The translations under genes were made by a program, and so were the position numbers. From Stylophora pistillata (lineage: Eukaryota), in assembly GCF_002571385.2 (NCBI RefSeq), contig NW_019218064.1:240414-304413 (forward strand): a stretch of DNA of 64,000 nucleotides, read 5' to 3'. Positions 3,942 to 64,000 of the stretch are shown piece after piece (the stretch's first letter is position 1; each line of letters starts with the position of its first letter). Below the pieces are notes generated by a model. That model was not told the origin of the DNA. It saw nothing but the letters and a program-made list of their open reading frames with translations, and did no database searches.

Positions 3942-5726
3942 TTAACATTGGGTTTCTTTCAATGCAGCTAAGTTTAAAAGCGACGGTGAGAACTGGAAGT
4001 AAACCGATGTCAAATCTCGATGATTTAAAAATGCTTTCTTTTCGCAATCGACGCCTCCGTCATTTTTGATATCGTCAAACGAACGTTTAATTTCTAAGGA
4101 TGATACTTTATCAGCTGTGGGTTGCGAGTTTTTTCTCGGCACCAAATCCATTGATTCGGTCGTGTCGCCAATCATTTCATTTGGTGAAAATGACAAATCA
4201 TCTGTCGCAGGTTGTGTAGTCTTCATAATGAGTTGTTCGTTCAAGGGCTGCGCATTCGGTGTCTCTACTATACCAAAACGCCTGATTCTGACCATTCCAT
4301 GTTCTTGAGCTGGTTTAAATGAAGGTTCCTCGTTAATCTTTTCAAGTCTAGGTTGTGACTGCAGCTTAATAAATCTAAAGGAATCGTCCAATTGAACTGA
4401 GCCGGGGTTATTCCTGTTTGTAGTTCCTGATAGGGTCTTGTCCGGGTCGTTGGCAAATCCCTCTCTAAGGAAAGAAATCTTCCTTGACGCTTTTCGATGG
4501 GAACTTTCTGGACTGTTAGAAATTGAGTGCTTGTAAAGTCTCTGATTTTCCTTGAGCTCCAAAGGGCCGCCATTGTCACTTCTCGATCGGCTCAATTTTC
4601 GCCAAACAAAAGAAAAGGATTCGCTAATAGAGCTGATCTTTCGTAAATAACTCAGTTCACTTCTATCCACAGAGTCGTCAAACGACCCATCTTGTTTACG
4701 TTTACATAAGCTGGTAAGTATTCTCCTGAACCCCCTTTTGAAATCCCTGCTGAATATCCAGTAGATAACGGGGTTGAAAATACTGTTAGTGTACGTGAAC
4801 ATTCTACAGATGATTCCGACTATTTGTGAGTGATCTTGGTTCAGTCCGTCACCAAAATCTGACCAGAGCCAGAAAATCTCGTTTGGTAACCTGCAAGTGG
4901 CGAAGACTATGACGACCGTCACGAACATTTTGGTCGCTCGAATATTCTGATTAGCTTTTCCCAGCAAACTGTTATGTCTCTGACCTATCGTTACTCGGCT
5001 TGCTTTACGCTGAAAATCCATTTGGCGGTTGTTATAGTTTCCAACTACGTTCACTTGACTTGGACGTTGTTGAACTTTCTCAAACATGTTTGCACTTGAG
5101 CGCAAGTTGGACAGAGTCATGGTGTACATCACGCTCATGAACGCTAAGGGAATTCCGTACTGGCCAATAAAAAGAGCCAGTGTGTACACCTGCCTGTAGT
5201 GAAACGCTGGCCATGTTTCTTCGCAAGACTTGGTGGACCCTTCGCCCACCAAATTCAGGTAATAAATGTAAGGTACCACAAACAACAGAGCCACAAAATG
5301 CATGATCACTATAGAACATTTTACTTGCTTGGAACTGAGTCTTTGCTTAAAAGGATGCATAATAACTCGGTAACGATCCAATGAAATGATGGCCAGTGTC
5401 AGTGATGCAGAAATGGCAGACAAAGTTGCAAGTGGCCAAAGAGTTTTGCAAAGGATTCTTCCAAAGGGCCAAATGTAGCCTTTTTCCTCCAGTGCCAGGT
5501 CAAATGGAATGCTGGCCAGAGGGGTTATTAAATCGCAAACTGCAAGGTTGAGAATGAGCAGATTTGAGGGGTTCCTCATTCGTTTCATCTTGCAGATGAC
5601 GATAATAACCAGAGTATTCCCAAGAAGACACAAAAGAAGAATGAGAGAGTACATCGTGATTTTGAAAACCTTGAACGAAAGAGTTTCCTTGTTGCTATCT
5701 TCTGTCGAATTTAGGTTGACCGCCAT
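3942..5726 (-). CDS. GPCR-1: class A neuropeptide-receptor-like GPCR, 594 aa, long C-tail ending KETQC
   Basis: Seven hydrophobic segments with GN (TM1), NLAVCD (TM2), WPFG..C, SLDRY, ECL2 C-EETWP and NPVIY; single-exon CDS. Confidence 0.96.
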   Translation of the reverse strand: MAVNLNSTEDSNKETLSFKVFKITMYSLILLLCLLGNTLVIIVICKMKRMRNPSNLLILNLAVCDLITPLASIPFDLALEEKGYIWPFGRILCKTLWPLATLSAISASLTLAIISLDRYRVIMHPFKQRLSSKQVKCSIVIMHFVALLFVVPYIYYLNLVGEGSTKSCEETWPAFHYRQVYTLALFIGQYGIPLAFMSVMYTMTLSNLRSSANMFEKVQQRPSQVNVVGNYNNRQMDFQRKASRVTIGQRHNSLLGKANQNIRATKMFVTVVIVFATCRLPNEIFWLWSDFGDGLNQDHSQIVGIICRMFTYTNSIFNPVIYWIFSRDFKRGFRRILTSLCKRKQDGSFDDSVDRSELSYLRKISSISESFSFVWRKLSRSRSDNGGPLELKENQRLYKHSISNSPESSHRKASRKISFLREGFANDPDKTLSGTTNRNNPGSVQLDDSFRFIKLQSQPRLEKINEEPSFKPAQEHGMVRIRRFGIVETPNAQPLNEQLIMKTTQPATDDLSFSPNEMIGDTTESMDLVPRKNSQPTADKVSSLEIKRSFDDIKNDGGVDCEKKAFLNHRDLTSVYFQFSPSLLNLAALKETQC

Positions 5727-9559: not shown

Positions 9560-9745
9560 AATTTACCCAGCTCTCAAAGTGAGGCTTCGTAGCTCAATTG
9601 GTAGTAGATCCTAACAAGATTTGATAAACAGTTTACAATCTCTTGTACCAAAGCAGTATCTGGGAGCCCGCTGGGCCTAAGCTTTTAAAAGCTTTGTCAT
9701 TGCAATTGCTTAAAATGCAGCCACTTGCGAAGATCATTGCTTTTC
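9560..9745 (+). repeat. Degenerate copy of the tRNA-like repeat
   Basis: CCAGCTCTC...GGCTTCGTAGCTCAATTGGTAG ... TTGCGAAGATCATTGC parallels 2265-2415. Confidence 0.45.
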
Positions 9746-10815: not shown

Positions 10816-12108
10816 ATGGATTCTAACATAACATCCAATGCAAGTGTAACAACACTTTTTCCTTTCTATTCCAGCCAAGTGAGTTATGTTACTGATGCAA
10901 TAAATGCGAGCCATGTAAACGTTTCTACAGACTACCCTAATACGGCGCAATCGCTCGACTTTTGGATCGTAAAGCTTGTCCTTTATGGCGTCATTCTGCT
11001 CGGAAGCTCCGTGGGGAACAGCCTTGTAATTTACATCATCGTCAGCAACGTCCGAATGAGAACAGCCTCCAACTATTTAATAATGAACCTGGCGCTGTGT
11101 GATTTTGTCACGCCAGTTTTCAGCATTCCTTTTGATTTCTTTCTTGAGGAATACAACTACATCTGGATGTATGGCGCAGCTATGTGCAAAATCCTGTGGC
11201 CTTTGACAACAATGTCTTCTACTTCGGCTGCGTTAACCCTAGCCGCAATCTCGCTCGATCGCTATCGCGTTATAATGCACCCATTTCGACCACGTTTGAC
11301 GATGTTCAAGATCAAATGCATAATTGCCGCAGTTTACGTGTTTTCACTGTTGATGGTCGCTCCGTATTCGTATGTCCTTATTCTGAAAGGAAATGAATGC
11401 CGCGAAATATGGCCTGATATCTCCTTCAAGAAGTATTATACCTTGGGTCTTTTCCTTGTGCAATATTGCATGCCTTTGATTTTTATGGTGTTCATGTATT
11501 CGCTTGCGCTGAAAAATTTGTACACTAGCGCAGACAAGACCAGCGGCCAGAAAGCCGAGCAAGAACAGGCTGCCGTCAGCCGAAAAGTCAGTCGGACATC
11601 AACGAACTCGCGATCGTCAGCAGCCGAAGCTGAACCGAAATTGAAAAAGGTGTCGTCCACGGTGCGTTTGGTGCGTAAATTCTCATCCACTGTCAGGAGA
11701 GGGAAGACAGAAGCAAATAAAAGAGCAACTAAGATGTTTATGGCCATAGTAGGAGTTTTTACCATCTGCATGTTCCCCAATCAAGCACTTTGGTTATGGG
11801 CGGACTTCTATAATGAGGGGCAGAATCCAAGATTCTTGAACGCAGTGATAATCTGTTGGCTTTTCACGTATGCCAACAGTGTCTGTAACCCGGTCATTTA
11901 CGCTGTTTTTAGCCGGGACTTTCGCCGAGGTTTTAAAAGAGCTTTTAGAAAAGCGTTCTGTTTACATCGATACAAAAACCGACAAGTATATAAAACAGAC
12001 ATGGTCGAAACGCTGACAACAGAGCTGAAATGCGTAGCTTCTGGAGAGACTGAGAAACGAAAGAGAAAAAATGCTACTGTGCAACGACCTAAGCTTTATC
12101 TTTTGTGA
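10816..12108 (+). CDS. GPCR-2: class A neuropeptide-receptor-like GPCR, 430 aa from first ATG
   Basis: N-glycosylation-rich N-terminus (NITS, NAS, NVS), GN, NLALCD, SLDRY, C-REIWP, MFPNQ and NPVIY. The ORF-track start at 10711 is GTG; first ATG is 10816. Confidence 0.96.
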   Translation: MDSNITSNASVTTLFPFYSSQVSYVTDAINASHVNVSTDYPNTAQSLDFWIVKLVLYGVILLGSSVGNSLVIYIIVSNVRMRTASNYLIMNLALCDFVTPVFSIPFDFFLEEYNYIWMYGAAMCKILWPLTTMSSTSAALTLAAISLDRYRVIMHPFRPRLTMFKIKCIIAAVYVFSLLMVAPYSYVLILKGNECREIWPDISFKKYYTLGLFLVQYCMPLIFMVFMYSLALKNLYTSADKTSGQKAEQEQAAVSRKVSRTSTNSRSSAAEAEPKLKKVSSTVRLVRKFSSTVRRGKTEANKRATKMFMAIVGVFTICMFPNQALWLWADFYNEGQNPRFLNAVIICWLFTYANSVCNPVIYAVFSRDFRRGFKRAFRKAFCLHRYKNRQVYKTDMVETLTTELKCVASGETEKRKRKNATVQRPKLYLL

Positions 12109-16200: not shown

Positions 16201-16332
16201 TCAACTCGCTAACAGCTGCTTCGATCGTCAACTGGGCTAAAACGAAATCCTTCTCGGCCAATAACAATAAGTTCAAACTTCGAAGAAGTTGAAAGTTCCC
16301 CGCGCCTTGGTCAAAGCGCCTTACAGTGAGAA

Positions 16333-17838
16333 ATGAATGGCAGCGAGACAGTCTCAGCTGGACCGAATAGAAGCTTTCCCACTGTATTTCCACATAATGT
16401 GCAAGGTGAATCTCAGGCCTTTAGTGTCATAAAGATATTCTTCTATTTCATCATCCTATCCGCCAGCACTTTTGGTAACAGCATGCTTGCTCACATCATC
16501 ATTCACACGAGAAAGATGCGGACCGCTAGTAACTTCCTGATATTAAACTTAGCCATTTGTGATTTAGTGACGCCGTTGATAAGCATTGTGTTTGATTTTA
16601 TCCTTGAAGAAAATAATTATGACTGGATTTACGGCGAAGCCATGTGTTCCATACTTTGGCCTACACAGACTTATTTTACTTGCGCGTCTTCGTTAACGCT
16701 TGCTGGAATCTCGCTGGATCGCTACAGAATAATCCTTCATCCATTCAAAATTCGCCTCACCAGCAAACAGATTAGTTTGTTAATTTTCCTGGTACATGTA
16801 TGCTCGCTAGTCGCTGTTGCTCCTTATGGTTATTTCCTCGTGCTGAGAAATGGTTCTTGTGAGGAAAACTGGCCCAAATTTTCCTACAGACAGGCTTACA
16901 CTTTTTTTTTGTTTCTGGTTCAATACGCAATGCCGCTCGTAATAATGATATTCATGTACACAATGGCTGTTCGAGCACTATGTCAAACTTCAAGGAAAAC
17001 ACGCGACAACTCAATATGTGCAAAAACTCCGCAATTTATCGTCAAGAAGCTTAAACTTGAAGCTAAACAGCAAGAAAAACATCGTGGACTATCTAAATCC
17101 CACTACACATTTATCAGACGGCTTGGCAAGCTCAATACAAGAGACATTTGGAAAACTCCTAATGCAAGGGCGACAAAAATGTTCATAGTGATTGTGACTG
17201 TCTTCGCAATATTTATGTTCCCCAATCAAATTGTGTGGTTGTGGGCAGATTTCGGTGGAGGGATAAATCATCCAGACTTTACCAAACTTTCCATTATTTG
17301 CTGGTTGTTTACATACACCAACAGTGTCGTGAACCCAGTAATTTTTGGTTTATTCAGCAAAGATTTTCGCAAAGGTTTTAGGAGGATTTTTCACAGCCTG
17401 CTGCGTTGCGAGAGATTAGTCGGGAAAGAGGATCTTGTAAGATTACGACGTCAAAGTACTAGCAAAACTCGTTCAGAAACGACGGAATCACATGGCACAG
17501 ATTACGGGTCGTGTACAAAAGACAGCAACATGTCCTGTCTTTTTCAAGATGAACAAAAGACACCGATGTTGGGAGGAAAAACTGATCATCAGTTTCACGA
17601 AATGTCCCCACCCTTAGCTCAACCAAATTTCGCTTCGAACAGAACCGCGATAAAATATTTCAGCAAACAGATGGTACCAAACCCGTTAAAAGCTTTTGAG
17701 CTCGAAGATGCAACTCGTCACTCCAGTGGCCTTCTTAGAGAAAATTATGTTGAACAATGGGGTACTTTGTCTAATTCAGAGTCTTACATTGAAACTTTGA
17801 CTGATGCGCTGAACAGCTCGCCGGAAACTAACTGTTAG
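16333..17838 (+). CDS. GPCR-3: class A neuropeptide-receptor-like GPCR, 501 aa, ends PETNC
   Basis: GN, NLAICD, SLDRY, C-EENWP, MFPNQIVWLWADFG and NPVIF. Confidence 0.96.
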   Translation: MNGSETVSAGPNRSFPTVFPHNVQGESQAFSVIKIFFYFIILSASTFGNSMLAHIIIHTRKMRTASNFLILNLAICDLVTPLISIVFDFILEENNYDWIYGEAMCSILWPTQTYFTCASSLTLAGISLDRYRIILHPFKIRLTSKQISLLIFLVHVCSLVAVAPYGYFLVLRNGSCEENWPKFSYRQAYTFFLFLVQYAMPLVIMIFMYTMAVRALCQTSRKTRDNSICAKTPQFIVKKLKLEAKQQEKHRGLSKSHYTFIRRLGKLNTRDIWKTPNARATKMFIVIVTVFAIFMFPNQIVWLWADFGGGINHPDFTKLSIICWLFTYTNSVVNPVIFGLFSKDFRKGFRRIFHSLLRCERLVGKEDLVRLRRQSTSKTRSETTESHGTDYGSCTKDSNMSCLFQDEQKTPMLGGKTDHQFHEMSPPLAQPNFASNRTAIKYFSKQMVPNPLKAFELEDATRHSSGLLRENYVEQWGTLSNSESYIETLTDALNSSPETNC

Positions 17839-24957: not shown

Positions 24958-25473
24958 ATCTCTTTCATATATGATATGTTGTATGAGGCCCAGAGTTGAT
25001 CTTACATCGAGATCGACCAAAGTGAGACGCATGCTTGCTCCGTAGCCGAGTGGCAATAATTTAAATGTTTTTTTTTTTTCTCTGTTTTTGTTTTCATTGG
25101 TCCCAAGCCAATGTCGCACTAATGATCACATAACACTTTAAAACATACTTGGAAAGGATGCATCAATAAAACGAGGGCGAGAAAAAAAAAAAAACATTTA
25201 CACTCCTATTATATTACCCTTGTCGCGACCAATTTGTCTTGCCGACAATTCTGGGATCGTTGTAAGCTTGAATGTTGAACTTAGCTAACTACACGATGTT
25301 GTCAAACAAAGGACGTTTGCAAAATATCAGTTTGTAATCACTGTGCTGATTTACGTAGATAAAATGAATTGCATGTAAATCAACAACTGTTTAGGAAGCG
25401 ATTTATTACTTTTTATAAAATGCACACCAGATGAACATAAATAAACCGAAGGACAAGCCCAAGGGCATTCACG

Positions 25474-25692
25474 TCAACAATTCGTTTCGGAAAAATTCCG
25501 AAGTACATCGTGTAGCGCTGAAGGCTTTAATGTCTCCGAGATCATTCTTGTATCATTGATAGAGCATGCATTTTCAAATTTAATTAGAGGATTAAAACAG
25601 TGTTTGTGAGCATTTTCGAGTGGAAGTTCCTTTGCCATCCCAAGCATATCGAACAGGATAGTTGTGTAAAAGCATTGGTCGACTCGGTCCTG
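25474..25692 (-). pseudogene. Out-of-frame remnant of the GPCR-4 C-terminal tail, ending SETNC-stop
   Basis: Hand translation gives QDRVDQCFYTTILFDMLGMAKELPLENAHKHCFNPLIKFENACSINDTRMISETLKPSALHDVLRNFSETNC*, which aligns with the GPCR-5 end ETLSKPGAHHFFEELRESSC*. Confidence 0.8.
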
Positions 25693-25781
25693 CTACATTT
25701 AGAGAAAATCATACAATTTACACTTCATAACATGGATGCTTTCTGATACGTTTTTTAGTAGATTGGAAAATATTTGTTGAT

Positions 25782-26921
25782 TCATAATGCAGGCCCTATT
25801 GCTCTGTCACTTGTGTAATCCCGAAGTGCAAAAGATTTCGCAGGATCTGGGTTTGAACTATGTAAATTGGCGTTCCTACTGACTTTGCGTACACATTTCC
25901 TAGTTTCGTTGCTAATCTTTCTCAAGGGCTTTATGGTAGTGCGGCCAATCCTTGCAAACCCAGACCTGAATTCCTTGTTTTTCAAGGCATAAATGAACGG
26001 ATTTAACACACTATTAGCGTAAGTAAAAAGACGACACACTACAGAAATGTAATGAAAAAATCTTTCGTCTGCGCCATTTCCAAAGTCCACCCAAAGCCAG
26101 AGAACTTGGTTCGGGAACATGCTGATGGCGAAGACAACCACAACAAGAACGAACATCTTTGCCAAGCGAATGTTTTGCTCTTTCCTTTTAAACTCAATAC
26201 TTTTATTACTAAAGGTGGATGACTGTCTTTTGAAGGAGTTTTTACTTTGTGTATCTGTGGAGAACAGTCTCTCAGTACTTTCCCGCAAACTGCGATGTAT
26301 GAGAGAGTATGTTACAGACATTGTCATCAAAGGTAAGGCGTACTGGAACAGAAACAGCACAACTGTGTACGCTTGTCTGTGGCAAAAACTTGGCCAGCTC
26401 TCGTCCCAAGAGTTTTCTTTATCAGTGAGATCCAAAGCGATGAAATAAGGAACACACAAGCCAATTGAAAAAGCCTGAATAGAGGATACGATGAGCAACA
26501 TCCTCTTCATCGAGAGACGTTTTGCAAACGGGTTCAAGAGAGTTCTGAGCCTATCTAAGCTGACAACTGCGAGGGTCAGTGAGGAGGAAGTTGAAAACGC
26601 CGTCTGGAATGGCCACAGAACTTTGCAAAAAGCTCTTCCAAATGGCCAAATGTAGTTCGTTTCTTCTAGCGCCAAATCAAACGGAATGCTCAGAGCTGGT
26701 GTGATGAGGTCGCATAATGCTAAGTTCAGAATCAACAGATTTGCTGGTGTCCTTTTCTCTTTTGCCCTCAAGATGACAGCTACGACCAAACTGTTGCCGA
26801 TACCACTTAAAACGAAGATTAAAACGTACAGTAAAACCTTTACCACTCGAAACTCTAGATATTCCAAGTTGGATACTTCATCAGACATATTACTCTCTCT
26901 TGCGCTTTCATTTACAGCCAT
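25782..26921 (-). CDS. GPCR-4: class A GPCR, 379 aa as read; likely decaying (ECL2 Cys>Trp, C-tail truncated by frameshift)
   Basis: GN, NLALCD, SLDRL, MFPNQVLWLWVDFG and NPFIY; first ATG 26921 (MAVNES). An ancestral-looking C-terminus lies out of frame at 25474-25692. Confidence 0.88.
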   Translation of the reverse strand: MAVNESARESNMSDEVSNLEYLEFRVVKVLLYVLIFVLSGIGNSLVVAVILRAKEKRTPANLLILNLALCDLITPALSIPFDLALEETNYIWPFGRAFCKVLWPFQTAFSTSSSLTLAVVSLDRLRTLLNPFAKRLSMKRMLLIVSSIQAFSIGLCVPYFIALDLTDKENSWDESWPSFCHRQAYTVVLFLFQYALPLMTMSVTYSLIHRSLRESTERLFSTDTQSKNSFKRQSSTFSNKSIEFKRKEQNIRLAKMFVLVVVVFAISMFPNQVLWLWVDFGNGADERFFHYISVVCRLFTYANSVLNPFIYALKNKEFRSGFARIGRTTIKPLRKISNETRKCVRKVSRNANLHSSNPDPAKSFALRDYTSDRAIGPAL

Positions 26922-31007: not shown

Positions 31008-32270
31008 TCAACATGAGCTTTCGCGAAGTTCTTCGAAGAAATGGTGCGCTCCAGGTTTTGAGAGGGTCTCGAGCAGCAATACCTCGTCTGAAGCTTCCAC
31101 GGAATTATAATTCTTGGCTCCTCTCGAATAGGTAGTAACATCTTTGCTGACGACGACATTTTGAATGGATGTTAGTGTATGGACATCGGCTGTGTCTGGG
31201 ATGAGCCCACTGGCACTCCTGCTGACCTTTTTAAGAACAAACTTCCTTGTCTCAGTGCTTATCTTTCTTAAGGGCTTCATACCAGCGCGACCAATCCTTG
31301 CAAATCCAGACCTAAATTCTTTGCTTTTCAGAGCATAGATGAACGGATTTAAAACACTGTTGGCGTAGGTGAACAGACGACACATCACAGAAATGTAATG
31401 AAACAGTCTGTTCTCCGCACCACGTCCAAAGTCTACCCAAAGCCAGAAGAATTGATTAGGTGACATGCCTATTGCAAATACCACTACAACGATGACGAAA
31501 ATTTTTGCCAAGTGAATGTTCTGTTCCCTGCGTTTCAATTCGCTTTCTTCTTTGCTTGAAGTCGAGTTGTTGCTGATGGTGTGATGTTGATGTCTATAAC
31601 TTCTTGTGCTCTCGGAAAAAAGCATTGTCACATTCGAACGTAAGCTTCGATAAATAAGCAGGTATGATACAGACATGGTTGTTAAAGGAAGAGCAAATTG
31701 AAACAGAAATAGCACAATGGTATAAACTTGGCTGTAGCCCGGTGGCCAAGTTTCTGTGCACGACTTTGGAGAGCTTTTGTATTGCAAAGTAATGAAATAA
31801 GGGATGCATAAAATAGTAGAGAAAACGTGAATTGCCACAACGGTCTTCACAATTCGCATAGATGATGGACGTTCACTCAAAGGCCTCGCAAGAGCTCTAA
31901 ATCTGTCCAAACTAATAACTGCCAAAGTTAAGGACGATGATGTCGAAAGCGCCGTCTGAAATGGCCACAGAATTTTGCACATCACTCTGCCGAACGGCCA
32001 CGCTTGGTTAAGCTCTTCCAAAGCCAAATCAAATGGAATGCTTAGAGCGGGTGTGAAGAGGTCGCAAAAAGCCAAATTCAGGACCAGAAGGTTTGGGGTC
32101 GTTCTCATTCCTGTGGCTCCAAGGATTACAATGGCCACTAAACTGTTTCCGATGCAACTTAAAATAAAAATTGCAACGTAAAGTGCTATCTTGACAGCAT
32201 GGAACTCCACGGATTCGGAAGCAATGGCATCGTTATTTCTCCCATCCAGACTGGTATTGTTGATTAACAT
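31008..32270 (-). CDS. GPCR-5: class A GPCR, 420 aa from first ATG, ends RESSC; closest paralog of GPCR-4
   Basis: GN, NLAFCD, SLDRF, C-TETWP, MSPNQFFWLWVDFG and NPFIY. Shares FHYISV.CRLFTYANSVLNPFIYALK.KEFRSGFARIGR with GPCR-4. Confidence 0.96.
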   Translation of the reverse strand: MLINNTSLDGRNNDAIASESVEFHAVKIALYVAIFILSCIGNSLVAIVILGATGMRTTPNLLVLNLAFCDLFTPALSIPFDLALEELNQAWPFGRVMCKILWPFQTALSTSSSLTLAVISLDRFRALARPLSERPSSMRIVKTVVAIHVFSTILCIPYFITLQYKSSPKSCTETWPPGYSQVYTIVLFLFQFALPLTTMSVSYLLIYRSLRSNVTMLFSESTRSYRHQHHTISNNSTSSKEESELKRREQNIHLAKIFVIVVVVFAIGMSPNQFFWLWVDFGRGAENRLFHYISVMCRLFTYANSVLNPFIYALKSKEFRSGFARIGRAGMKPLRKISTETRKFVLKKVSRSASGLIPDTADVHTLTSIQNVVVSKDVTTYSRGAKNYNSVEASDEVLLLETLSKPGAHHFFEELRESSC

Positions 32271-36903: not shown

Positions 36904-37669
36904 NNNNNNNNNNNNNNNNNNNNNNNNNNNNNNNNNNNNNNNNNNNNNNNNNNNNNNNNNNNNNNNNNNNNNNNNNNNNNNNNNNNNNNNNNNNNNNNNN
37001 NNNNNNNNNNNNNNNNNNNNNNNNNNNNNNNNNNNNNNNNNNNNNNNNNNNNNNNNNNNNNNNNNNNNNNNNNNNNNNNNNNNNNNNNNNNNNNNNNNNN
37101 NNNNNNNNNNNNNNNNNNNNNNNNNNNNNNNNNNNNNNNNNNNNNNNNNNNNNNNNNNNNNNNNNNNNNNNNNNNNNNNNNNNNNNNNNNNNNNNNNNNN
37201 NNNNNNNNNNNNNNNNNNNNNNNNNNNNNNNNNNNNNNNNNNNNNNNNNNNNNNNNNNNNNNNNNNNNNNNNNNNNNNNNNNNNNNNNNNNNNNNNNNNN
37301 NNNNNNNNNNNNNNNNNNNNNNNNNNNNNNNNNNNNNNNNNNNNNNNNNNNNNNNNNNNNNNNNNNNNNNNNNNNNNNNNNNNNNNNNNNNNNNNNNNNN
37401 NNNNNNNNNNNNNNNNNNNNNNNNNNNNNNNNNNNNNNNNNNNNNNNNNNNNNNNNNNNNNNNNNNNNNNNNNNNNNNNNNNNNNNNNNNNNNNNNNNNN
37501 NNNNNNNNNNNNNNNNNNNNNNNNNNNNNNNNNNNNNNNNNNNNNNNNNNNNNNNNNNNNNNNNNNNNNNNNNNNNNNNNNNNNNNNNNNNNNNNNNNNN
37601 NNNNNNNNNNNNNNNNNNNNNNNNNNNNNNNNNNNNNNNNNNNNNNNNNNNNNNNNNNNNNNNNNNNNN
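36904..37669. other. Assembly gap (N run)
   Basis: Seen directly. Confidence 0.99.
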
Positions 37670-39240: not shown

Positions 39241-39243
39241 TAT

Positions 39244-40145: not shown

Positions 40146-40203
40146 GTTTATTCAATACGTCGACCAGTATGAAGACAGGCTCTACTTACATAAATATAAC
40201 TGT

Positions 40204-44468: not shown

Positions 44469-45380
44469 ATGGAAAATCAAGCACTTTCACGGATCTTTCG
44501 AGGAAGCGAAACAATTCCTGGGCTCAACAACAACTCGCCAAGCACATTATCGACGGCTATGTCGTTGGGGGCACAGATAATCGCTCGGTTCCAAATCCCT
44601 AAGTATGTCTTCTAAGTCATCATCTTGACTTTAAGTATTGCTGGCAATACAGCTGTCGTACACATTATCAGGACTCAGAGGCAAGTTAAGAAAACGTCCT
44701 ATATCCTATTAATACTAAACTTGGCCACTTGCGACACCATTGATCCCACCATCAGCATTCCGATCGACTGGGTCTTTGAAGAGTCCGGCTACATGTGGGC
44801 CCTTGGGCCAATCTGTTGCAGGATACTTTGGCCCTTTCAGACAATGTTCTCCACTTCATCTGCCTTAACACTCACCATGATTTGCTACGACAGATATCGA
44901 GCGATTGTGCAACCGTTCAAGGCCCGAAGGATCACGAAAACTCACACCAAGCACTGCATCTTCGCATTTCATTTAACATCATGTATGTTGGTGATACCTT
45001 ATGTCAGTGTGCTGAGGTGGAAGGAGATGACTGCCAAGAAAACTGCCCTGTTTCAAGCCACAGAAGAACATACACTATAGTTCTCTTTCTTGTACAATAT
45101 GGAATACCGCTGGTTCTTATGATAACCCTGCATTCTCTTGCGCTCAGGACTCTCCGCGGAAAATCCAACTACACGAAACCGCAAAGGAATGGAAGTCAAC
45201 GGATAGAGAGAGTCACAGTCAGACCTATCTGCCATGAATCTTCACAGGAAAAAAAAGGAGCAAAACATTCGAGTCACCAAGATGTTTGTTGTGGTTGTTA
45301 TGGTGTTTTGCGTTGAGTATGTTCCCCAACCAAGTTCTGTGGTTATGGGTGGATTTCGGAAATGGAGAAGAGAGTGAGTA
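44469..45380 (+). pseudogene. GPCR-6 pseudogene (TM1-TM6), truncated by a Penelope-like insertion
   Basis: ATG 44469; in-frame TAA at 44613 in TM1 (FQIPKYVF*VIIL); frameshifts near 45015, 45250 (A run) and 45306. Motifs NLATCD, CYDRY, QYGIPL, EQNIRVTKMF and SMFPNQVLWLWVDFG remain. Confidence 0.93.
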
Positions 45381-45382
45381 CA

Positions 45383-45614
45383 ATCTATCGACCCACTACC
45401 GCTACCGACAGACGACATTTATGGACTTGCTAAACATTTGCCTAACGTCTACTTACTTTCAGTACAACGGTAAACACTACAAACAGTTACACGGCACTGC
45501 CGTGGAGTCTCCAGTTTCTGTTGTCATAGCAGAAATTGTGATGCAGAACATCGAGGAACGCGCCCTTTCGACTTGCCGACAAACGATACCGCTTTGGTTA
45601 CGTTACGTTGACGA
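45383..45614 (+). mobile_element. Penelope-like retroelement reverse transcriptase fragment, 5'-truncated, running into the gap
   Basis: MDLLNICLTSTYFQYNGKHYKQLHGTAVESPVSVVIAEIVMQNIEERAL...LWLRYVD matches the PLE RT motifs Q..G.AMGSP.S and RYVDD, with MG mutated to VE. Confidence 0.9.
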
Positions 45615-46482
45615 NNNNNNNNNNNNNNNNNNNNNNNNNNNNNNNNNNNNNNNNNNNNNNNNNNNNNNNNNNNNNNNNNNNNNNNNNNNNNNNNNNNNNN
45701 NNNNNNNNNNNNNNNNNNNNNNNNNNNNNNNNNNNNNNNNNNNNNNNNNNNNNNNNNNNNNNNNNNNNNNNNNNNNNNNNNNNNNNNNNNNNNNNNNNNN
45801 NNNNNNNNNNNNNNNNNNNNNNNNNNNNNNNNNNNNNNNNNNNNNNNNNNNNNNNNNNNNNNNNNNNNNNNNNNNNNNNNNNNNNNNNNNNNNNNNNNNN
45901 NNNNNNNNNNNNNNNNNNNNNNNNNNNNNNNNNNNNNNNNNNNNNNNNNNNNNNNNNNNNNNNNNNNNNNNNNNNNNNNNNNNNNNNNNNNNNNNNNNNN
46001 NNNNNNNNNNNNNNNNNNNNNNNNNNNNNNNNNNNNNNNNNNNNNNNNNNNNNNNNNNNNNNNNNNNNNNNNNNNNNNNNNNNNNNNNNNNNNNNNNNNN
46101 NNNNNNNNNNNNNNNNNNNNNNNNNNNNNNNNNNNNNNNNNNNNNNNNNNNNNNNNNNNNNNNNNNNNNNNNNNNNNNNNNNNNNNNNNNNNNNNNNNNN
46201 NNNNNNNNNNNNNNNNNNNNNNNNNNNNNNNNNNNNNNNNNNNNNNNNNNNNNNNNNNNNNNNNNNNNNNNNNNNNNNNNNNNNNNNNNNNNNNNNNNNN
46301 NNNNNNNNNNNNNNNNNNNNNNNNNNNNNNNNNNNNNNNNNNNNNNNNNNNNNNNNNNNNNNNNNNNNNNNNNNNNNNNNNNNNNNNNNNNNNNNNNNNN
46401 NNNNNNNNNNNNNNNNNNNNNNNNNNNNNNNNNNNNNNNNNNNNNNNNNNNNNNNNNNNNNNNNNNNNNNNNNNNNNNNNNN
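45615..46482. other. Assembly gap (N run)
   Basis: Seen directly. Confidence 0.99.
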
Positions 46483-48763: not shown

Positions 48764-50089
48764 ATGGCTAATTCAACTCTTTCCTCTGACGCTTCAAGAA
48801 AGACAGATTTGCATGTGGATACATTTTATCCGCCACCTGAAACACTGGCCTTTAAAATCCCAAAGATAGTCGTGTATTGTTCGATTCTTCTCGTCTGTAC
48901 TACTGGAAATGCAATGCTGATTGCGGTCATTCTTAGCTCAAGACGCATGAGATCTCTACCGAGTAAGATTCTCATTTTAAACTTGGCGTTTGCCGACCTT
49001 TTAACTTTGATCATGAGCATTCCATTTGATGTTGTACTGGAAGAAAATCACTACGTCTGGCCTTATGGAGCTGTTTTGTGCAAGTTGTTGTTCCCTGCAG
49101 CCACTATGCTTTCGACTTCTTCATCCCTCACTTTAGCCGCCATTTCGCTGGATAGGTACAAAACATTGCTTCATCCTTTCAAGTCAAAACTCTCGGTGAC
49201 CCAAGTGAAATGCATCCTTGTAGTGGTGGATTGGGTTTCTGTTTTATTTGTCGTTCCATACGCCGTGTTTCTTGGATTACAGAACAACATTTGCACAGAA
49301 GAATGGCCAGGGTTTTTGTATCGACAAATATACACTGTGTTTTTGGTCTCTGTTCAATACGCCCTTCCCTTGCTATTCATGATGACTATGTACATTCTCG
49401 CTTCTACAAAACTTTACGATGCGACCAAGAATGTAAGAAAAATGTCAATATCTTGTGAAAACGACAGACGCACATCTATGTCCTTTAGAGAACGTCTCGT
49501 GCGTCGAGAAAGCTTTGCCGTGAGCCAGGAACAAAACGTAAAAGTCACAAAAATGTTTGTTATCATTGTTGTTGCATTTGCCATTTGCACTCTTCCTAAC
49601 CAAGTGCTGTGGCTATGGATCGATTTTGGCAAAAATGGTGATGTCACCTCCTTTGCGAGAGAGATTATAATCTGCCGGTTTTTCACTTACACTAACGGCT
49701 GTGTAAATCCTATTATATTTTTCACATTTAGACGCGATTATCGTCGCGGTCTGCATAAGATCCTACGTAAAATGACCGGGAGAAAACCAGAGACAAACTT
49801 CGAGAGGATACGAAGGTTGTGGAGCAAATTTGACATTAGCCCGCAGGTTGGCAACGACACGAAGCTTAAGCGTCAGAGGAAAACGGGAATTCAGGAAAGA
49901 AGTCCATTCGTTGACGTAGAAAACTTAAAATCCCCAATCAAAAAATGTGGCAAATCGACACTACACTCACAACTACACAAACGTGAATCTTTACAGGCAG
50001 AGCAAACACTAAAAGCCCGCCATATCATTTCAACTACAAATGGAAGAAAACTGTCTCAATATGAAAGCATGGCAACTTCGTGGGTTTAG
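48764..50089 (+). CDS. GPCR-7: class A GPCR, 441 aa from first ATG, ends ATSWV
   Basis: GN, NLAFAD, WPYG..C, SLDRY, C-TEEWP, TLPNQVLWLWIDFG and NPIIF. Confidence 0.96.
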   Translation: MANSTLSSDASRKTDLHVDTFYPPPETLAFKIPKIVVYCSILLVCTTGNAMLIAVILSSRRMRSLPSKILILNLAFADLLTLIMSIPFDVVLEENHYVWPYGAVLCKLLFPAATMLSTSSSLTLAAISLDRYKTLLHPFKSKLSVTQVKCILVVVDWVSVLFVVPYAVFLGLQNNICTEEWPGFLYRQIYTVFLVSVQYALPLLFMMTMYILASTKLYDATKNVRKMSISCENDRRTSMSFRERLVRRESFAVSQEQNVKVTKMFVIIVVAFAICTLPNQVLWLWIDFGKNGDVTSFAREIIICRFFTYTNGCVNPIIFFTFRRDYRRGLHKILRKMTGRKPETNFERIRRLWSKFDISPQVGNDTKLKRQRKTGIQERSPFVDVENLKSPIKKCGKSTLHSQLHKRESLQAEQTLKARHIISTTNGRKLSQYESMATSWV

Positions 50090-52967: not shown

Positions 52968-53100
52968 AGAGGGATAGGGAGTAACGGAAAATTTTGGGGG
53001 ACCATATAGTTTTAGGGGGAACGGAATGGGGATGAACCGTCGCCAACAAAGTATCAAGGAATGACTACAGAAAATTGACTGCCAATGAGGGGTGATCACA
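52968..53100 (+). repeat. Dispersed repeat fragment related to 2795-2995
   Basis: TTTTAGGGGGAACGG...GAAAATTGACTGCCAATGAGGGGTGATC. Confidence 0.55.
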
Positions 53101-53108
53101 ACATTTAG

Positions 53109-53292
53109 TAAATAAACCCCTTCGGGCGGCTGGTACGTCGGCTGATAATGTCCGCGGCTGAGAGATTGTCCGAAAAATAAATATTTGGCCGATAAGCGAA
53201 GCTTCGAGGGCAAATGTGAAATTTTGAGGACAGTCTCTCAACCAAGGACATTATCAGCCGACATACCAGCAAGCCAGAACGGGGTTTATTTA
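53109..53292. mobile_element. MITE/foldback element with about 62-bp imperfect arms
   Basis: TAAATAAACCCC...GCTGGTACGTCGGCTGATAATGTCC.CGGCTGAGAGATTGTCC versus GGACAGTCTCTCAACC.AGGACATTATCAGCCGACATACCAGC...GGGGTTTATTTA. Confidence 0.85.
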
Positions 53293-53568
53293 TTTTATAA
53301 CCATCCCATGAAGTTTCACATCGCAATTAAACAGCGCGTAAACACAGGTCAGGATATACATTATAACTTTTAATAAATTACGTTAACTTAAGATAAAATC
53401 TGTAAAATTTCTCGGCTGGTCGAAGTTTAATTGTAGAGCATTTGACAATTATATATCATATATCGATGACCGTTTATAAAATTGAATAAAAAATAATGAG
53501 GAAATTGTTTTGAAAACTCGTGTCTCTCGTTATTTTTCAGTTAGTTTTATTTGAGGTCACAATGACGC

Positions 53569-53630
53569 AAGTTCTACATGGACATAAAAAATAAGTTCTG
53601 CATGGATATAAAATGAAGTTCTGCATGGAC
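53569..53630. repeat. About 23-bp tandem repeat x3 in the presumed 3' UTR of GPCR-8
   Basis: AAGTTCT[AG]CATGGA occurs three times. Confidence 0.85.
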
Positions 53631-53767
53631 AATTCTTTGACTGTACCGCTCTACAAGAGATTTACAGTACATTTCGGGAAGGCGGCTGTTAGCCTACCCT
53701 TGTCACTCCATAAAGTTTGATTTTTCAGATAAATCAGTGTCATGATAAAATATGAAGAATTTCCCAA

Positions 53768-55228
53768 CTAACAGTCTGTCTGGGGAAGACCTATGAGAGA
53801 ATCTAACTTGTCCAACGCAATGGTGAGATCGCTTTCGTAAAAGGAAACGTTTATAGATATATTGCAGTTAGCATTCGAACTGCAAGGATCCGAGGCACTT
53901 TTCAAAGCTGGGAAACCCAGTTTATCTGCACTGAGTTGGTTCTCTTTCGAATTACCACTCGGTTGGTCCATCGAAGGGATGTCCAAGCTGTTTTTCGTTT
54001 TGTTACAGTCATGATTTGTCTTTGACTGGTGATCCAAAAAGCTCCCTGAATGTGTCGGAGCACTTTGAAATGATCCTCTGGGTGTCAAGAACCTTGGCGT
54101 GCTCAGTGATCCACGCGGTGTTAGCCACATAGGAGTGTACTTTCCATTTCCAACGGGAGAACTGCTGTCGTGTTTCATTGAGTTATCATCTCCGCAAGAC
54201 GACGGATGTCTGAAGAAGGCCACAAACCCCTGATGAAAATGGCGGTTAAACTTGTAGAAGATAAATGGATTTAAACAGCTATTGGCGTAGGTGAAGAGAC
54301 GACAGATGATGGCAATAATTGGGAAGAGTCTGTGGGTTTTCCCTCCAGCAAAGTCTCCCCAAATCCAAAGGACCTCAATCGGCAACGTAAACAAAGCGAA
54401 CACCACAACTATAAAAACAAAAACTTTAGTAACTTGAGCATTATGTTCCCTGTGCTGACTAAAATGTTTTTCTAAGGTGCTGCTTAATGAGCTTCCATCT
54501 TCTGAGTCTTTTAGCCCAGTGTCGGCCGGTTTTGATGACCCATTTCTTCTACCCTTCGACGATGCGGATGAAACTGATAAGGATCGTGCTCTGCTCGTGG
54601 TCGCGAAGAGATTCCATGCTGCGTGGATGTACATGAAGGCCATGAATATCAGTGGGAGAGCGTATTGAGCAAGAAACAGAACAAATGTGTAAATCTTGGA
54701 GAGTACTTCGTTCGGCCAAACTTCTTGACAGGTGGAGTTTGGTGACAATCGCGAGGTTATCAAATGGGGAACGACCAAGATCCCTGAACAGCAATGCACA
54801 AACGCAATAAGTATCTTGACAGTTCTTGTGTCCAAACGCTGTTTGAATGGATGCATCAGTGTTCTATATCGATCCAGTGATATTGCAGCCAGTGTAAGAG
54901 ATGAAGAAGTCGCGAATAACGTTGCAGTTGCTGGAAACAACTTGCACAAGGTGGACCCAAATGGCCACGTGTTGTTGTTTTCTACCAACACCATTTCAAG
55001 TGGAATGCTAATCAGCGGGGTCAACAAATCGCACAAAGCGAGATTTACAATGAAAAGATTGCCGGGAACGCGTTTTAAATGTTTAAACCTGCAAATGATT
55101 GTTATGACCATAGCATTGCCAAGGATACTCACGATCAAGATAATGACATAAAGAAGAGTCATTGTTACTTTGACTGCCATCTGGTCGTGGTACAAGTTTT
55201 GTACGGTTGCCTCTGATGTCGAGTTCAT
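53768..55228 (-). CDS. GPCR-8: class A GPCR, 486 aa from first ATG, ends PQTDC; most divergent intact member
   Basis: GN, NLALCD, WPFG..C, SLDRY, C-QEVWP, TLPIEVLWIWGDF and NPFIF. First ATG is 55228 (MNSTSE). Confidence 0.96.
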   Translation of the reverse strand: MNSTSEATVQNLYHDQMAVKVTMTLLYVIILIVSILGNAMVITIICRFKHLKRVPGNLFIVNLALCDLLTPLISIPLEMVLVENNNTWPFGSTLCKLFPATATLFATSSSLTLAAISLDRYRTLMHPFKQRLDTRTVKILIAFVHCCSGILVVPHLITSRLSPNSTCQEVWPNEVLSKIYTFVLFLAQYALPLIFMAFMYIHAAWNLFATTSRARSLSVSSASSKGRRNGSSKPADTGLKDSEDGSSLSSTLEKHFSQHREHNAQVTKVFVFIVVVFALFTLPIEVLWIWGDFAGGKTHRLFPIIAIICRLFTYANSCLNPFIFYKFNRHFHQGFVAFFRHPSSCGDDNSMKHDSSSPVGNGKYTPMWLTPRGSLSTPRFLTPRGSFQSAPTHSGSFLDHQSKTNHDCNKTKNSLDIPSMDQPSGNSKENQLSADKLGFPALKSASDPCSSNANCNISINVSFYESDLTIALDKLDSLIGLPQTDC

Positions 55229-63999: not shown

Positions 64000-64000
64000 A

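What the first reader, a model, noticed from the sequence alone, without database searches (positions are those of the whole stretch)
3942..55228. Tandem array of eight paralogous orphan neuropeptide-type GPCRs showing birth-and-death evolution
Seen: eight related 7TM genes with intronless CDS in about 51 kb, oriented -,+,+,-,-,+(pseudo),+,-. Most share private signatures (SIPFD..LEE..Y.W..G, S.SS.LTL..ISLDR, QY..PL..M, N....KMF, PNQ..WLW.DFG, C.LFTY.NS), so they arose by local duplication. The array holds deep paralogs, a close pair (GPCR-4/5), a decaying copy and a dead copy. Inference: a lineage-specific receptor battery for a family of related ligands, which may be an undescribed peptide-sensing locus.
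Basis: partly seen in the sequence, partly recalled or inferred. Interest (0 to 1): 0.75.

Follow-up and report, generated by a model that had tools for sequence, protein, structure and literature searches.

The report
Old coral neuropeptide-type receptor gene cluster
A stony-coral contig carries nine neighbouring genes for peptide-hormone-type receptors (seven intact in the window, one dead, one at the edge); the cluster is real but old and shared with other corals and sea anemones, so it is a conserved orphan receptor family and not a new lineage-specific invention.

Summary
Observation confirmed. The window holds 7 intact single-ORF class A GPCR genes and 1 pseudogene, in the stated orientations. 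A ninth member starts just outside the window, and its 3' end lies at 63553-64000. Paralogs are 32-43% identical, and G4/G5 are 62% identical.

Interpretation partly supported. The genes are one family of neuropeptide-receptor type; the nearest solved structures are NPFF, orexin, CCK, galanin and NPY receptors. The array is not lineage-specific. Each gene has its own ortholog clade in other stony corals. A 16-kb contig from another coral keeps G9-G8 in the same order and orientation. Sea-anemone genes branch inside the family, and an AU test rejects a coral-only origin (p 6e-5).

Turnover is slow. There was one duplication (G4/G5) within corals. There is one unitary pseudogene, G6, whose orthologs are intact in other corals. 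G4 has lost its C-tail, and this loss is also seen in another sample and in polyA RNA contigs.

New details:
- The three residues that hold the Arg of RF-amide peptides in human NPFFR1 are kept in 152 of 154 family proteins, which suggests Arg-X-amide ligands.
- 115 of 160 family proteins end in E-[S/T]-x-C.

The ligands remain unknown. Identity with deorphanised Nematostella receptors could not be tested because the supplements are closed. The scan noted another peptide-receptor-like GPCR array elsewhere in this genome (s1-787414).

The parts
3942..5726 (-). G1, intact class A GPCR, 594 aa, ends ETQC
   Evidence: ORF. 7tm_1 E 1.9e-48. Pairs with Oculina P0093, SH-aLRT 94 and 100/100.
10816..12108 (+). 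G2, intact GPCR, 430 aa from the first ATG, ends LYLL
   Evidence: ORF from 10711. 7tm_1 E 8.8e-46. Pairs with Desmophyllum KAJ7379439.1, SH-aLRT 97.
16333..17838 (+). G3, intact GPCR, 501 aa, ends ETNC
   Evidence: Orthologs at 84% and 72% identity. AF2 model shows 7 TM helices plus helix 8, a disordered tail at 380-481 and a short helix at 482-495.
25782..26921 (-). G4, GPCR with an intact 7TM core but a shortened tail, 379 aa. The window allele has W172 in place of the ECL2 Cys.
   Evidence: polyA RNA contigs are collinear with the DNA. The W172 codon is at 26406-26408, and three other runs read Cys there.
25474..25781 (-). Dead former C-tail of G4: out of frame, with 2 stops and a second frame change. 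The old end ...ETNC is still readable. It is now 3' UTR.
   Evidence: tblastn of orthologs P0001-P0003. A contig of another sample, X3, shows no indel here. Run X19 has 17 further bases deleted at 25509-25522.
31008..32270 (-). G5, intact GPCR, 420 aa, 62% identical to G4, ends ESSC
   Evidence: Pairs with P0051, SH-aLRT 100.
44469..45385 (+). G6, unitary pseudogene: TAA at 44613, frame changes near 45014 and 45184, TGA at 45235, and cut off after TM6
   Evidence: Best matches are the Oculina P0102 clade, at 62-63% over about 175 aa against about 40% to the window paralogs. It nests in that clade with SH-aLRT 97 and 100.
45386..45614 (+). Fragment of an interspersed repeat that ends G6. The junction lies at about 45385-45418. 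An assembly gap follows at 45615-46482.
   Evidence: 150 matches scored in the coral's own genome, up to 95% identical, and most begin at query residue 11-12.
48764..50089 (+). G7, intact GPCR, 441 aa, ends TSWV
   Evidence: Pairs with P0270, SH-aLRT 100.
53768..55228 (-). G8, intact GPCR, 486 aa, ends QTDC
   Evidence: Pairs with Orbicella XP_020622912.1, SH-aLRT 97. An ortholog lies next to a G9 ortholog on L066.
63553..64000 (-). 3' end (last 149 codons) of G9, a ninth family member that runs on to about window 65208. 551 aa, ends ETIL.
   Evidence: L010 ORF 892-2547(-). Pairs with Acropora orthologs, SH-aLRT 100.

Best explanation
This is an old, conserved tandem cluster of nine class A, neuropeptide-receptor-type GPCR genes of a stony coral. 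Local duplications made it, and most of them predate the split between stony corals and sea anemones.

Each intact gene most likely encodes a working receptor for a short amidated peptide. Binding in the helical bundle would activate a G protein through the usual D2.50 / DRY / NPxxY machinery. The ligands probably carry an Arg next to the amidated C-terminal residue. I infer this because the three residues that hold that Arg in human NPFFR1 (E45.52 in ECL2, T5.39, D6.59) are kept throughout the family.

Most members end in E-[S/T]-x-C at the tip of a disordered tail. This is probably a docking motif for a PDZ scaffold, or a site for lipid attachment.

In this species one old paralog (G6) has died, and G4 has lost its tail and motif but is still transcribed.

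Shown: the genes, the family, the orthology, the age, the lesions and G4 transcription. Inferred: the ligand class, the coupling and the role of the tail.
For: - Family and fold: full-length 7tm_1 matches. The G3 model has seven helices plus helix 8, pLDDT 76.4. The nearest solved folds are OX1R/OX2R, NPFFR1/2, NPY2R/4R, NK1R, CCK1R and GALR1, TMt 0.78-0.87. By sequence the profile's best PDB matches are NPFFR2/1, OX2R, CCK1R, GALR1 and NPY2R, at E 4e-59 to about 1e-49. The first amine receptor comes at 7e-43.
- Working motifs: N1.50, D2.50, R3.50, P5.50, P6.50 and N7.49 are present in all 8 intact proteins.
- Age and orthology: every window gene pairs with another species' protein. G9 orthologs occur in five Acropora species, G8 in Orbicella and G2 in Desmophyllum. 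Anemone proteins (Nematostella XP_032239920, XP_032218877, XP_032235762/3; Actinia XP_031566322/4) branch as sisters of the G3, G2 and G4-6 groups. The AU test rejects 'all coral sequences form one clade', with dlnL 105.9 and p 6.2e-5.
- Synteny: L066 carries G9 and G8 orthologs 7 kb apart on one strand, as in the window. Orthologs of G3, G4, G5 and G7 share a contig length of 527,168. Orthologs of G1, G3, G4, G5 and G6 share a contig length of 2,734,675.
- Ligand class: the HMMER alignment puts the family's C-x-E, Y-T and D-F-G on NPFFR1's C203/E205, T217 and D294. PMC13107563 (passages read) gives these as the contacts of the peptide's Arg. The triad is complete in 152 of 154 family proteins.
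- Tail: 115 of 160 family proteins end in [EQD][ST]xC, against 8 of 111 relatives outside the family. Nematostella, Actinia and Actinostola members share this ending.
- Expression: polyA RNA contigs of two studies cover G4 from 25209 to about 27243 without a joint. They give zero depth over 27321-28128, which the DNA-like run X3 does cover.
Against: - No ligand is known, and no receptor of this clade could be tied to a tested one.
- W6.48 of the CWxP motif is absent from all members; M is seen in 126 of 154. The activation details may therefore differ from textbook class A.
- The Arg triad is not specific to this family. 70 of 111 more distant cnidarian relatives also have it, so it points to a broad ligand class and not to a particular peptide.
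- Other RF-amide contacts differ. Q3.32 is present only in G3-G6, position 6.52 is Q/E instead of W, and 7.39 is R/W/G instead of H.
- S/T-x-hydrophobic ends are common outside the family too, in 64 of 111.
- Apart from L066, the synteny rests on equal contig lengths, not on positions.
- The RNA runs are labelled 'coral metagenome' and most of their contigs are 95-99% alike, so they may come from a close relative. Transcription was checked for G4 only.
- Raw-read run X24 gave no reads (about 6% of it was read), which is no test.
- Support for family monophyly is moderate (74 and 87).
Confidence: 0.8

Rival explanations
1. One reading: a lineage-specific receptor battery made by recent local duplication, turning over quickly by birth and death as chemoreceptor arrays do.
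For: The genes lie in tandem. They include a 62% pair, a pseudogene and a copy with a lost tail. Rhodopsin-like GPCRs are the commonest domain among coral-amplified orthogroups, 34 of 192, and many of these are tandem duplicates (PMC10236652, passages read). There are weak Pfam hits to the nematode Srsx chemoreceptor family.
Against: Each of the nine lineages has orthologs in other corals. Anemone genes nest inside the family, and a coral-only clade is rejected at p 6e-5. Only one duplication falls inside the corals. The dead copy is an old paralog that is intact elsewhere, not a failed new duplicate.
Confidence: 0.04
2. The family is already characterised: its Nematostella co-orthologs are among the 31 receptors deorphanised by Thiel et al. 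2024 (for PRGamide, LRWamide, FLRNamide, HIRamide, RFamides and others). The coral genes would then be plain orthologs of known peptide receptors.
For: Thiel et al. tested 161 Nematostella GPCRs chosen from clusters connected to neuropeptide receptors. They describe hexacoral or anthozoan expansions holding receptors for Arg-containing amidated peptides (PMC11087051, sections 7 and 8 read). The conserved Arg triad fits such ligands.
Against: Nothing links the sequences. The paper's main text carries no accession numbers for receptors. A full-text search for six accession numbers of the anemone and Orbicella homologs found 0 papers. The homologs carry only automatic names. Only 31 of the 161 tested receptors found a ligand.
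Confidence: 0.2
3. The receptors sense something other than endogenous neuropeptides, such as small molecules, environmental or microbial cues, or symbiont signals.
For: All members are orphans. W6.48 is missing. Noel et al. 2023 speculate that amplified coral GPCRs serve immunity or host-symbiont interaction (PMC10236652, passage read).
Against: Among the 60 best matches shown, the first non-peptide receptor ranks 44th, and nearly all the nearest folds listed are peptide receptors. The Arg-binding triad and the ECL2 hairpin are kept. Strict 1:1 orthology over long times fits conserved internal ligands better than shifting external cues.
Confidence: 0.12

Closest known systems
Human RF-amide receptors NPFFR1/NPFFR2 (PDB 9vi9, 9jg0, 9jfy, 9m1o)
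   Same: These are the best sequence matches among solved structures (E 4e-59 to 3e-55), and the fold matches at TMt 0.64-0.81. Shared features are the ECL2 C-x-E-x-W-P, the Y-T at 5.38-5.39 and the D-[FY]-G at 6.59-6.61. These include the three contacts of the ligand's Arg.
   Different: Identity is only about 22%. OX2R, CCK1R, GALR1 and NPY2R score almost as well, so there is no specific affinity. W6.48 and W6.52 are absent. Q3.32 is present in only some paralogs. Position 2.61 is Asp, not Thr, and 7.39 is R/W/G, not His. Thiel et al. report no direct orthology between cnidarian and bilaterian peptide receptors (abstract).
Cnidarian neuropeptide GPCR expansions described in Nematostella (Thiel et al. 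2024, PMC11087051)
   Same: Class A receptors, expanded in Hexacorallia or Anthozoa, with ligands that are short amidated peptides, most of them containing Arg. Four Nematostella co-orthologs of the coral genes lie on one 22.17-Mb chromosome, and two of them have consecutive accession numbers.
   Different: Which of that paper's families this clade belongs to is unknown, and so is whether any member has a ligand. That paper's main text does not treat genomic clustering ('tandem' 1 and 'chromosom' 1 occurrence, neither about receptor gene order).
Tandemly duplicated GPCR families of coral genomes (Noel et al. 2023, PMC10236652)
   Same: Rhodopsin-like GPCR genes in tandem in a coral genome. The coral's own genome has many more such groups, for example 5 related genes on contig C276 and several on C171, C12 and C54.
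   Different: Those families are described as genus-specific amplifications. This cluster is the opposite: a stable set of old paralogs with 1:1 orthologs.
Cys-ended PDZ ligands of CaV2 channels (DDWC; ETWC in placozoans) bound by Mint and RIM PDZ domains (bioRxiv 10.1101/2024.02.26.582151)
   Same: A short conserved motif ending in Cys at the tip of a long divergent, disordered C-terminus. E-T-x-C resembles the placozoan ETWC (passages read).
   Different: The invariant Trp at the second-last position of the channel motif is missing here (x is D, T, N, Q or S). No binding has been tested. The D2 dopamine receptor's terminal Cys is reported as palmitoylated, which is an alternative role (PMC4633242, search listing and abstract start only).

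Membership tests
Class A (rhodopsin-like) GPCR, Pfam PF00001 | Full-length match to the 7tm_1 profile above the gathering score | tested here: met
   7 of 7 window proteins, 143-178 bits against a cut-off of 30.5, profile 1-260/260.
Class A (rhodopsin-like) GPCR, Pfam PF00001 | Seven transmembrane helices plus helix 8 | tested here: met
   AF2 model of G3: helices 28-58, 65-93, 101-135, 144-167, 183-226, 276-307 and 316-341, then 343-374. Folds match solved class A receptors.
Class A (rhodopsin-like) GPCR, Pfam PF00001 | N1.50, D2.50, D/E-R-Y (R3.50), P5.50, P6.50, NPxxY | tested here: met
   Present in all 8 intact proteins. G4 and G5 have DRL and DRF, as their orthologs do.
Class A (rhodopsin-like) GPCR, Pfam PF00001 | CWxP toggle-switch Trp6.48 | tested here: not met
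   Position 6.48 is M, R or T in all 8. Across the family it is M in 126, R in 16 and T in 9 of 154. Not every class A receptor has this Trp (recalled).
Class A (rhodopsin-like) GPCR, Pfam PF00001 | Disulfide pair C3.25 - C45.50 (ECL2) | tested here: met
   Both Cys are present in 7 of 8 intact proteins. The window's G4 allele has W at 45.50, while three other runs read Cys there.
Bilaterian RF-amide receptor family (NPFFR1/2, QRFPR, PrRPR) | Acidic residue at 6.59, plus E45.52 and T5.39, contacting the ligand's Arg | tested here: met
   All three are present in 7 of 8 window proteins (G9 has Q6.59) and in 152 of 154 family proteins. Their roles come from PMC13107563 and PMC4058657 (passages read).
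Bilaterian RF-amide receptor family (NPFFR1/2, QRFPR, PrRPR) | Contacts of the C-terminal Phe-amide: T2.61, Q3.32, W6.52, H7.39 | tested here: not met
   2.61 is D (E in G8). 3.32 is Q only in G3, G4 and G5 (A or T in the others). 6.52 is Q or E. 7.39 is R, W or G.
Bilaterian RF-amide receptor family (NPFFR1/2, QRFPR, PrRPR) | Orthology: a specific grouping with that family | tested here: inconclusive
   PDB E-values for NPFFR, OX2R, CCK1R, GALR1 and NPY2R all lie within about ten orders of magnitude. No tree with bilaterian sequences was built here. Thiel et al. report no direct orthology (abstract).
Deorphanised Nematostella neuropeptide GPCRs (Thiel et al. 2024) | Sequence identity or 1:1 orthology with a receptor that has a proven ligand | not testable with these tools
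   The receptor sequences are only in supplements and Zenodo, and supplements are closed. A search for the accession numbers found 0 papers.
Fast-evolving birth-and-death receptor arrays (chemoreceptor type) | Species- or genus-specific clades, many recent duplicates and many pseudogenes | tested here: not met
   Nine old lineages have 1:1 orthologs. The AU test rejects a coral-only clade. One of the nine loci is a pseudogene, and one duplication falls inside the corals.
Class I PDZ-binding C-terminus (X-S/T-X-hydrophobic-COOH) | S/T at position -2 and a hydrophobic or Cys last residue, conserved at the end of a divergent tail | tested here: met
   6 of 8 window proteins: ETQC, ETNC, ESSC, QTDC, TSWV and ETIL. 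G2 ends LYLL and G4 has lost its tail. In the family, 131 of 160 proteins fit and 115 of 160 end [EQD][ST]xC. Actual PDZ binding cannot be tested here.

The most novel reading that the evidence does not exclude
The nine-gene cluster is an ancient hexacoral 'receptor battery' that has stayed physically linked since before corals and anemones split. Each paralog would be tuned to a different member of the Arg-X-amide neuropeptide repertoire. Most members would be anchored through a family-wide E-T-x-C tail to a Mint/RIM-type PDZ scaffold, that is, placed at release sites. If so, the cluster gives a ready-made, orthology-anchored set of candidates for deorphanising coral neuropeptide signalling. 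It would also be a first case of a Cys-ended PDZ ligand shared by a whole GPCR family.
Probability: 0.2. Interest if true: 0.55.

Novelty: new member of a known kind. Interest (0 to 1): 0.35.

Why it matters
Coral neuropeptide signalling is almost uncharted at the receptor level. A set of seven intact receptors anchored by orthology gives concrete targets and a concrete first peptide library for deorphanisation. This set has a conserved Arg-binding triad, clear counterparts in Nematostella and Actinia, and natural loss-of-function cases (G6 dead, G4 tail-less). The family-wide E-[S/T]-x-C terminus is a testable lead for how these receptors are positioned in cells. Beyond that the locus is ordinary. 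Tandem class A GPCR groups are common in this genome and in corals generally, and cnidarian expansions of peptide receptors are already described.

Tried and rejected
- Ligand gene nearby: a crude six-frame scan of the window for ORFs with three or more G-[KR]-[KR]-type processing sites found only G7 itself. There is no sign of a neuropeptide precursor in the window.
- Other ORFs: Pfam scans of 8 other ORFs gave only a Peptidase_M20 exon at 264-671.
- Gene conversion from G5 as the source of the odd G4 allele: rejected by eye, because G5 has different residues at the six sites.
- Dating the G6 loss: a search with the Oculina G6 ortholog listed 28 G6-clade proteins. None was on the 527,168 contig that carries the G3, G4, G5 and G7 orthologs. 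Of the 28 G6-clade proteins checked, only 5 gave a separate hit over the pseudogene's first half, and the best of these reaches 63% identity. The remnant is itself decayed (end branch 0.80 against 0.27-0.32 for its neighbours), so this does not date the loss.
- dN/dS: not computed. The only orthologous DNA in hand (metagenome loci, 52-67% protein identity) is too diverged.
- ESM Atlas: it gave only generic class A neighbours. The first was a cnidarian cluster automatically named 'QRFP-like peptide receptor'.
- A single-sequence phmmer search of G3 against the PDB at E<=1e-30 found nothing. The profile search was used instead.
- G4/G5 timing relative to the second pair of clades seen in other corals (one holding Montipora) stays unresolved, with SH-aLRT 54.
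- Rows left out: proteins under 300 aa were left out of the first tree. 54 sequences at least 80% identical to a kept one were dropped before the 128-row tree, and they are listed. The named-taxon tree used 34 rows chosen because they carry a species name.
- Supplements of PMC11087051 could bear directly on the 'orphan' claim and were not seen.

Full report
WHAT IS THERE

The window is part of a 416,426-bp contig of a 398-Mb coral assembly (C280:240414-304413). Listing ORFs of 200 aa or more gives nine. Two are artefacts of N runs. The other seven all match Pfam 7tm_1 over the whole profile, at E 1.3e-41 to 4.7e-52. With the first ATG they are G1 3942-5726(-), G2 10816-12108(+), G3 16333-17838(+), G4 25782-26921(-), G5 31008-32270(-), G7 48764-50089(+) and G8 53768-55228(-).

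tblastn with these proteins finds one more, broken copy, G6, at 44469-45385(+), spread over three frames. It finds nothing else in the intergenic DNA at E<=1 apart from two chance-level hits. Pairwise identity is 32-43%, and 62% for G4/G5.

A ninth member, G9 (551 aa, minus strand), begins just beyond the window, and its last 149 codons lie at 63553-64000. No further member lies within 40 kb on either side.

THE GAPS

The gap at 36904-37669 sits in intergenic DNA with no receptor homology near it. The gap at 45615-46482 follows a 230-bp piece of an interspersed repeat. That repeat has 150 scored matches in the same genome, up to 95% identical, and most matches begin at residue 11-12 of my query. 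This places the junction with G6 at about 45385-45418. Continuity across this gap cannot be known.

G6 is dead regardless of the gap. It has a TAA at 44613, frame changes near 45014 and 45184, and a TGA at 45235, all upstream of the gap. Its TM7 is found nowhere else in the window.

WHAT KIND OF RECEPTOR

A profile of the eight intact proteins finds human NPFFR2 and NPFFR1, OX2R, CCK1R, GALR1 and NPY2R as the best solved relatives, at E 4e-59 to about 1e-49. The first amine receptor appears at 7e-43.

An AlphaFold2 model of G3 (52-row alignment, mean pLDDT 76.4) shows the following:
- seven helices, an ECL2 hairpin and helix 8;
- a disordered tail at residues 380-481;
- a short helix at 482-495, just before the end.

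Its nearest solved folds are orexin, NPFF, NPY, NK1, CCK and galanin receptors, TMt 0.78-0.87. N1.50, D2.50, R3.50, P5.50, P6.50 and N7.49 are present in all eight. Trp6.48 is absent from all of them; across the family M occupies that position in 126 of 154. 'Neuropeptide-type class A GPCR' is thus supported by similarity. No ligand is known.

HOW OLD IS THE ARRAY

Database searches with G4, G3 and an Oculina G6 ortholog, and a profile search of 1.84 billion representatives, gave about 400 proteins.

In a FastTree of 271 sequences and in IQ-TREE trees of 128 and 152 sequences, each window gene sits in its own clade with proteins of other species. The SH-aLRT supports are:
- G1 + Oculina, 94
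- G2 + Desmophyllum, 97
- G4 + P0002, 99, and G4 + Orbicella, 95
- G5 + P0051, 100
- G7 + P0270, 100
- G8 + Orbicella, 97
- G9 + Acropora, 100
- G3 is weaker: 59 for its nearest pairing and 82 for the wider clade.

All are automatic ('galanin receptor type 1-like', 'orexin receptor type 1-like', 'neuropeptide FF receptor 2-like').

Sea-anemone proteins (Nematostella, Actinia, Exaiptasia, Actinostola) branch as sisters of the G3 group, the G2 group and the G4-G6 group. On a 34-row tree of window genes plus named corals and anemones, forcing all coral sequences of the G1-G8 clade into one clade costs 105.9 log-likelihood units and is rejected (p-AU 6.2e-5).

Only the G4/G5 split falls inside the corals. 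That clade has 37 tips, all from coral-type sequences, with support 96. Its relation to a second pair of clades in other corals is unresolved, with support 54.

SYNTENY

Direct evidence: a 16-kb metagenome contig (L066) carries a G9 ortholog (58% identity) and a G8 ortholog (63%) 7 kb apart on one strand. This matches their order and orientation in the window.

Indirect evidence: proteins that are orthologs of different window genes share the length of their longest contig.
- 527,168: G3, G4, G5 and G7.
- 2,734,675: G1, G3, G4, G5 and an intact G6.
- 580,004 in Orbicella: G4 and G8.
- 434,383 in Actinia: XP_031566322 and XP_031566324.
- One 22.17-Mb Nematostella chromosome: four co-orthologs, two of them with consecutive accession numbers.

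Equal contig lengths and neighbouring accession numbers are hints, not positions.

THE DEAD COPY AND THE DECAYING COPY

G6's best matches are not its neighbours in the window (about 40% identity). They are the clade of Oculina XP_078342322 and relatives, at 62-63% over the first ~175 residues. G6 nests inside that clade with supports of 97 and 100. It is therefore a unitary pseudogene: an old paralog that is intact in other corals and lost here. It is not a failed recent duplicate. Its end branch is 0.80, against 0.27-0.32 for its intact neighbours.

G4 keeps an intact 7TM core that is 82% identical to its closest ortholog. The last ~105 codons of the ancestral gene are out of frame, hold two stops and change frame again.

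A contig from another sample (X3) behaves as DNA, because it covers genic and intergenic parts evenly. It spans 25200-26980 without any indel, so the broken tail is not an assembly slip.

PolyA RNA contigs from two studies (X8, X19) cover 25209 to about 27243 collinearly, with no joint. They give zero depth over 27321-28128, where X3 has full depth. G4 is therefore transcribed as an intronless message whose 3' UTR is the dead tail. X19 also lacks 17 bases at 25509-25522. These RNA runs are labelled 'coral metagenome' and are mostly 95-99% alike, so they may come from a close relative. Raw-read run X24 gave no reads and is no test.

AN UNEXPLAINED DETAIL

The window's G4 allele differs from X3, X8 and X19 by six non-synonymous changes, all in codons 143-204 (TM4-ECL2-TM5). 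The synonymous differences lie in codons 25, 49 and 84. At five of the six non-synonymous sites, three different bases are seen among the four sequences.

One of the six changes is W172 in place of the ECL2 cysteine. All three other runs read Cys there, and 153 of 154 family proteins have Cys. This could be a decaying allele, selection on the ligand-facing loop, or base errors.

HOW IT MOST LIKELY WORKS

The HMMER alignment to NPFFR1 and NPFFR2 puts three family motifs onto known contacts:
- C-x-E in ECL2 onto C45.50/E45.52;
- Y-T onto T5.39;
- the D of W-x-D-F-G onto D6.59, nine residues after P6.50.

In the NPFFR1 cryo-EM paper (PMC13107563, passages read), E205(45.52) forms the salt bridge with the Arg of the RF-amide, T217(5.39) gives an essential hydrogen bond to it, and D294(6.59) joins the network. 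A 2011 review records that D6.59 mutants lose affinity and activation (PMC4058657, passages read).

The triad is complete in 7 of 8 window proteins (G9 has Q6.59). It is also complete in 152 of 154 family proteins, 5 of 6 in the G9 clade and 70 of 111 more distant cnidarian relatives. I therefore infer ligands with an Arg close to an amidated C-terminus. This is the pattern of most Nematostella peptides that found receptors: QGRFa, QITRFa, LRWa, FLRNa, HIRa, VRHa, PRGa and RPa (PMC11087051, section 7 read).

The other RF-amide contacts (2.61, 3.32, 6.52, 7.39) differ and vary between paralogs. That is what one would expect if the paralogs discriminate the last residue. This is inference; no binding was tested.

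THE TAIL

The tails cannot be aligned and range in length from about 50 to 260 residues. Even so, 6 of 8 window proteins end in S/T-x-hydrophobic or Cys: ETQC, ETNC, ESSC, QTDC, TSWV and ETIL.

Across the family, 115 of 160 proteins end in [EQD][ST]xC, against 8 of 111 relatives outside it. The motif is present in Nematostella (ETYC, ESRC), Actinia (ETQC, ETDC) and Actinostola. [quoted passage not shown]

Cys-ended PDZ ligands exist. CaV2 channels end in DDWC, or ETWC in placozoans, and these ends bind Mint and RIM PDZ domains, including those of non-bilaterians (bioRxiv 10.1101/2024.02.26.582151, passages read). A terminal Cys can also be palmitoylated, as reported for the D2 receptor (PMC4633242, listing and abstract start only).

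G4 of this coral has lost the motif. Which partner binds it, if any, is unknown.

COMPARISON WITH WHAT IS KNOWN, AND NOVELTY

Tandem duplication of rhodopsin-like GPCRs is a described feature of coral genomes, at 34 of 192 amplified orthogroups (PMC10236652, passages). The own genome has many other groups. The scan has noted another array of seven peptide-receptor-like GPCRs on another piece of this genome (s1-787414; not tested by me).

Expansion of neuropeptide GPCRs in Hexacorallia is described for Nematostella (PMC11087051, sections 7 and 8). Whether this clade's Nematostella members were among the 161 receptors tested or the 31 deorphanised could not be checked. The sequences are in supplements, which are closed. 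The main text gives no accession numbers for them. A full-text search for six accession numbers found no paper.

I file the locus as a new member of a known kind. It is a conserved, still orphan clade of cnidarian peptide-type receptors kept as a cluster. The incremental points are its age and synteny, the unitary pseudogene, the conserved Arg triad and the E-[S/T]-x-C terminus.

VERDICT

Interest 0.35.

Noticed in passing
window 26312-26495 (G4 codons 143-204): The window allele of G4 carries six non-synonymous differences from three other runs, all within 184 bp. Five of the sites show three different bases among the four sequences. One change replaces the ECL2 Cys with Trp. The synonymous differences lie elsewhere in the gene.
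   Followed up: partly
window 25509-25522: RNA-run contig X19 lacks 17 bases (5+6+6) inside the dead former tail of G4. This is a further sign that this stretch is no longer constrained.
   Followed up: no
window 45386-45614: A fragment of a highly repeated element follows G6. It has at least 150 copies in the genome, up to 95% identical, and some copies lie in open frames of over 2000 aa. Pfam found no domain in the 77-aa piece. It was only counted, not analysed.
   Followed up: partly
window 264-671 (-): An ORF whose end matches the start of Peptidase_M20 (E 1.3e-10). It is probably an exon of a neighbouring multi-exon gene to the left of the array.
   Followed up: no
G000 contig C276, about 230.9-340.4 kb (L006, L007, L008, L011, L015): A second group of five related class A GPCR genes, 35-38% identical to G4, forms the sister group of the family in the trees. 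Further groups lie on contigs C171, C12, C54 and C1.
   Followed up: partly
L076 4705-5115 and 8715-9347; L077-L083: Several metagenome contigs match the family only from residue ~118 onward, after the DRY motif. On L076 a separate N-terminal piece lies 3.6 kb upstream. This suggests a related subfamily with an intron after TM3.
   Followed up: no
all family proteins, position 6.48: The family lacks the Trp of the CWxP motif altogether. M, R or T stands in its place, in the window genes and in 151 of 154 relatives.
   Followed up: partly
G3 residues 482-495 (window about 17776-17817) and the matching ends of G1, G5, G8 and G4's dead tail: A short predicted helix (pLDDT about 70) with spaced Leu residues directly precedes the E-T-x-C end. 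The conserved terminal element may therefore be longer than four residues.
   Followed up: no
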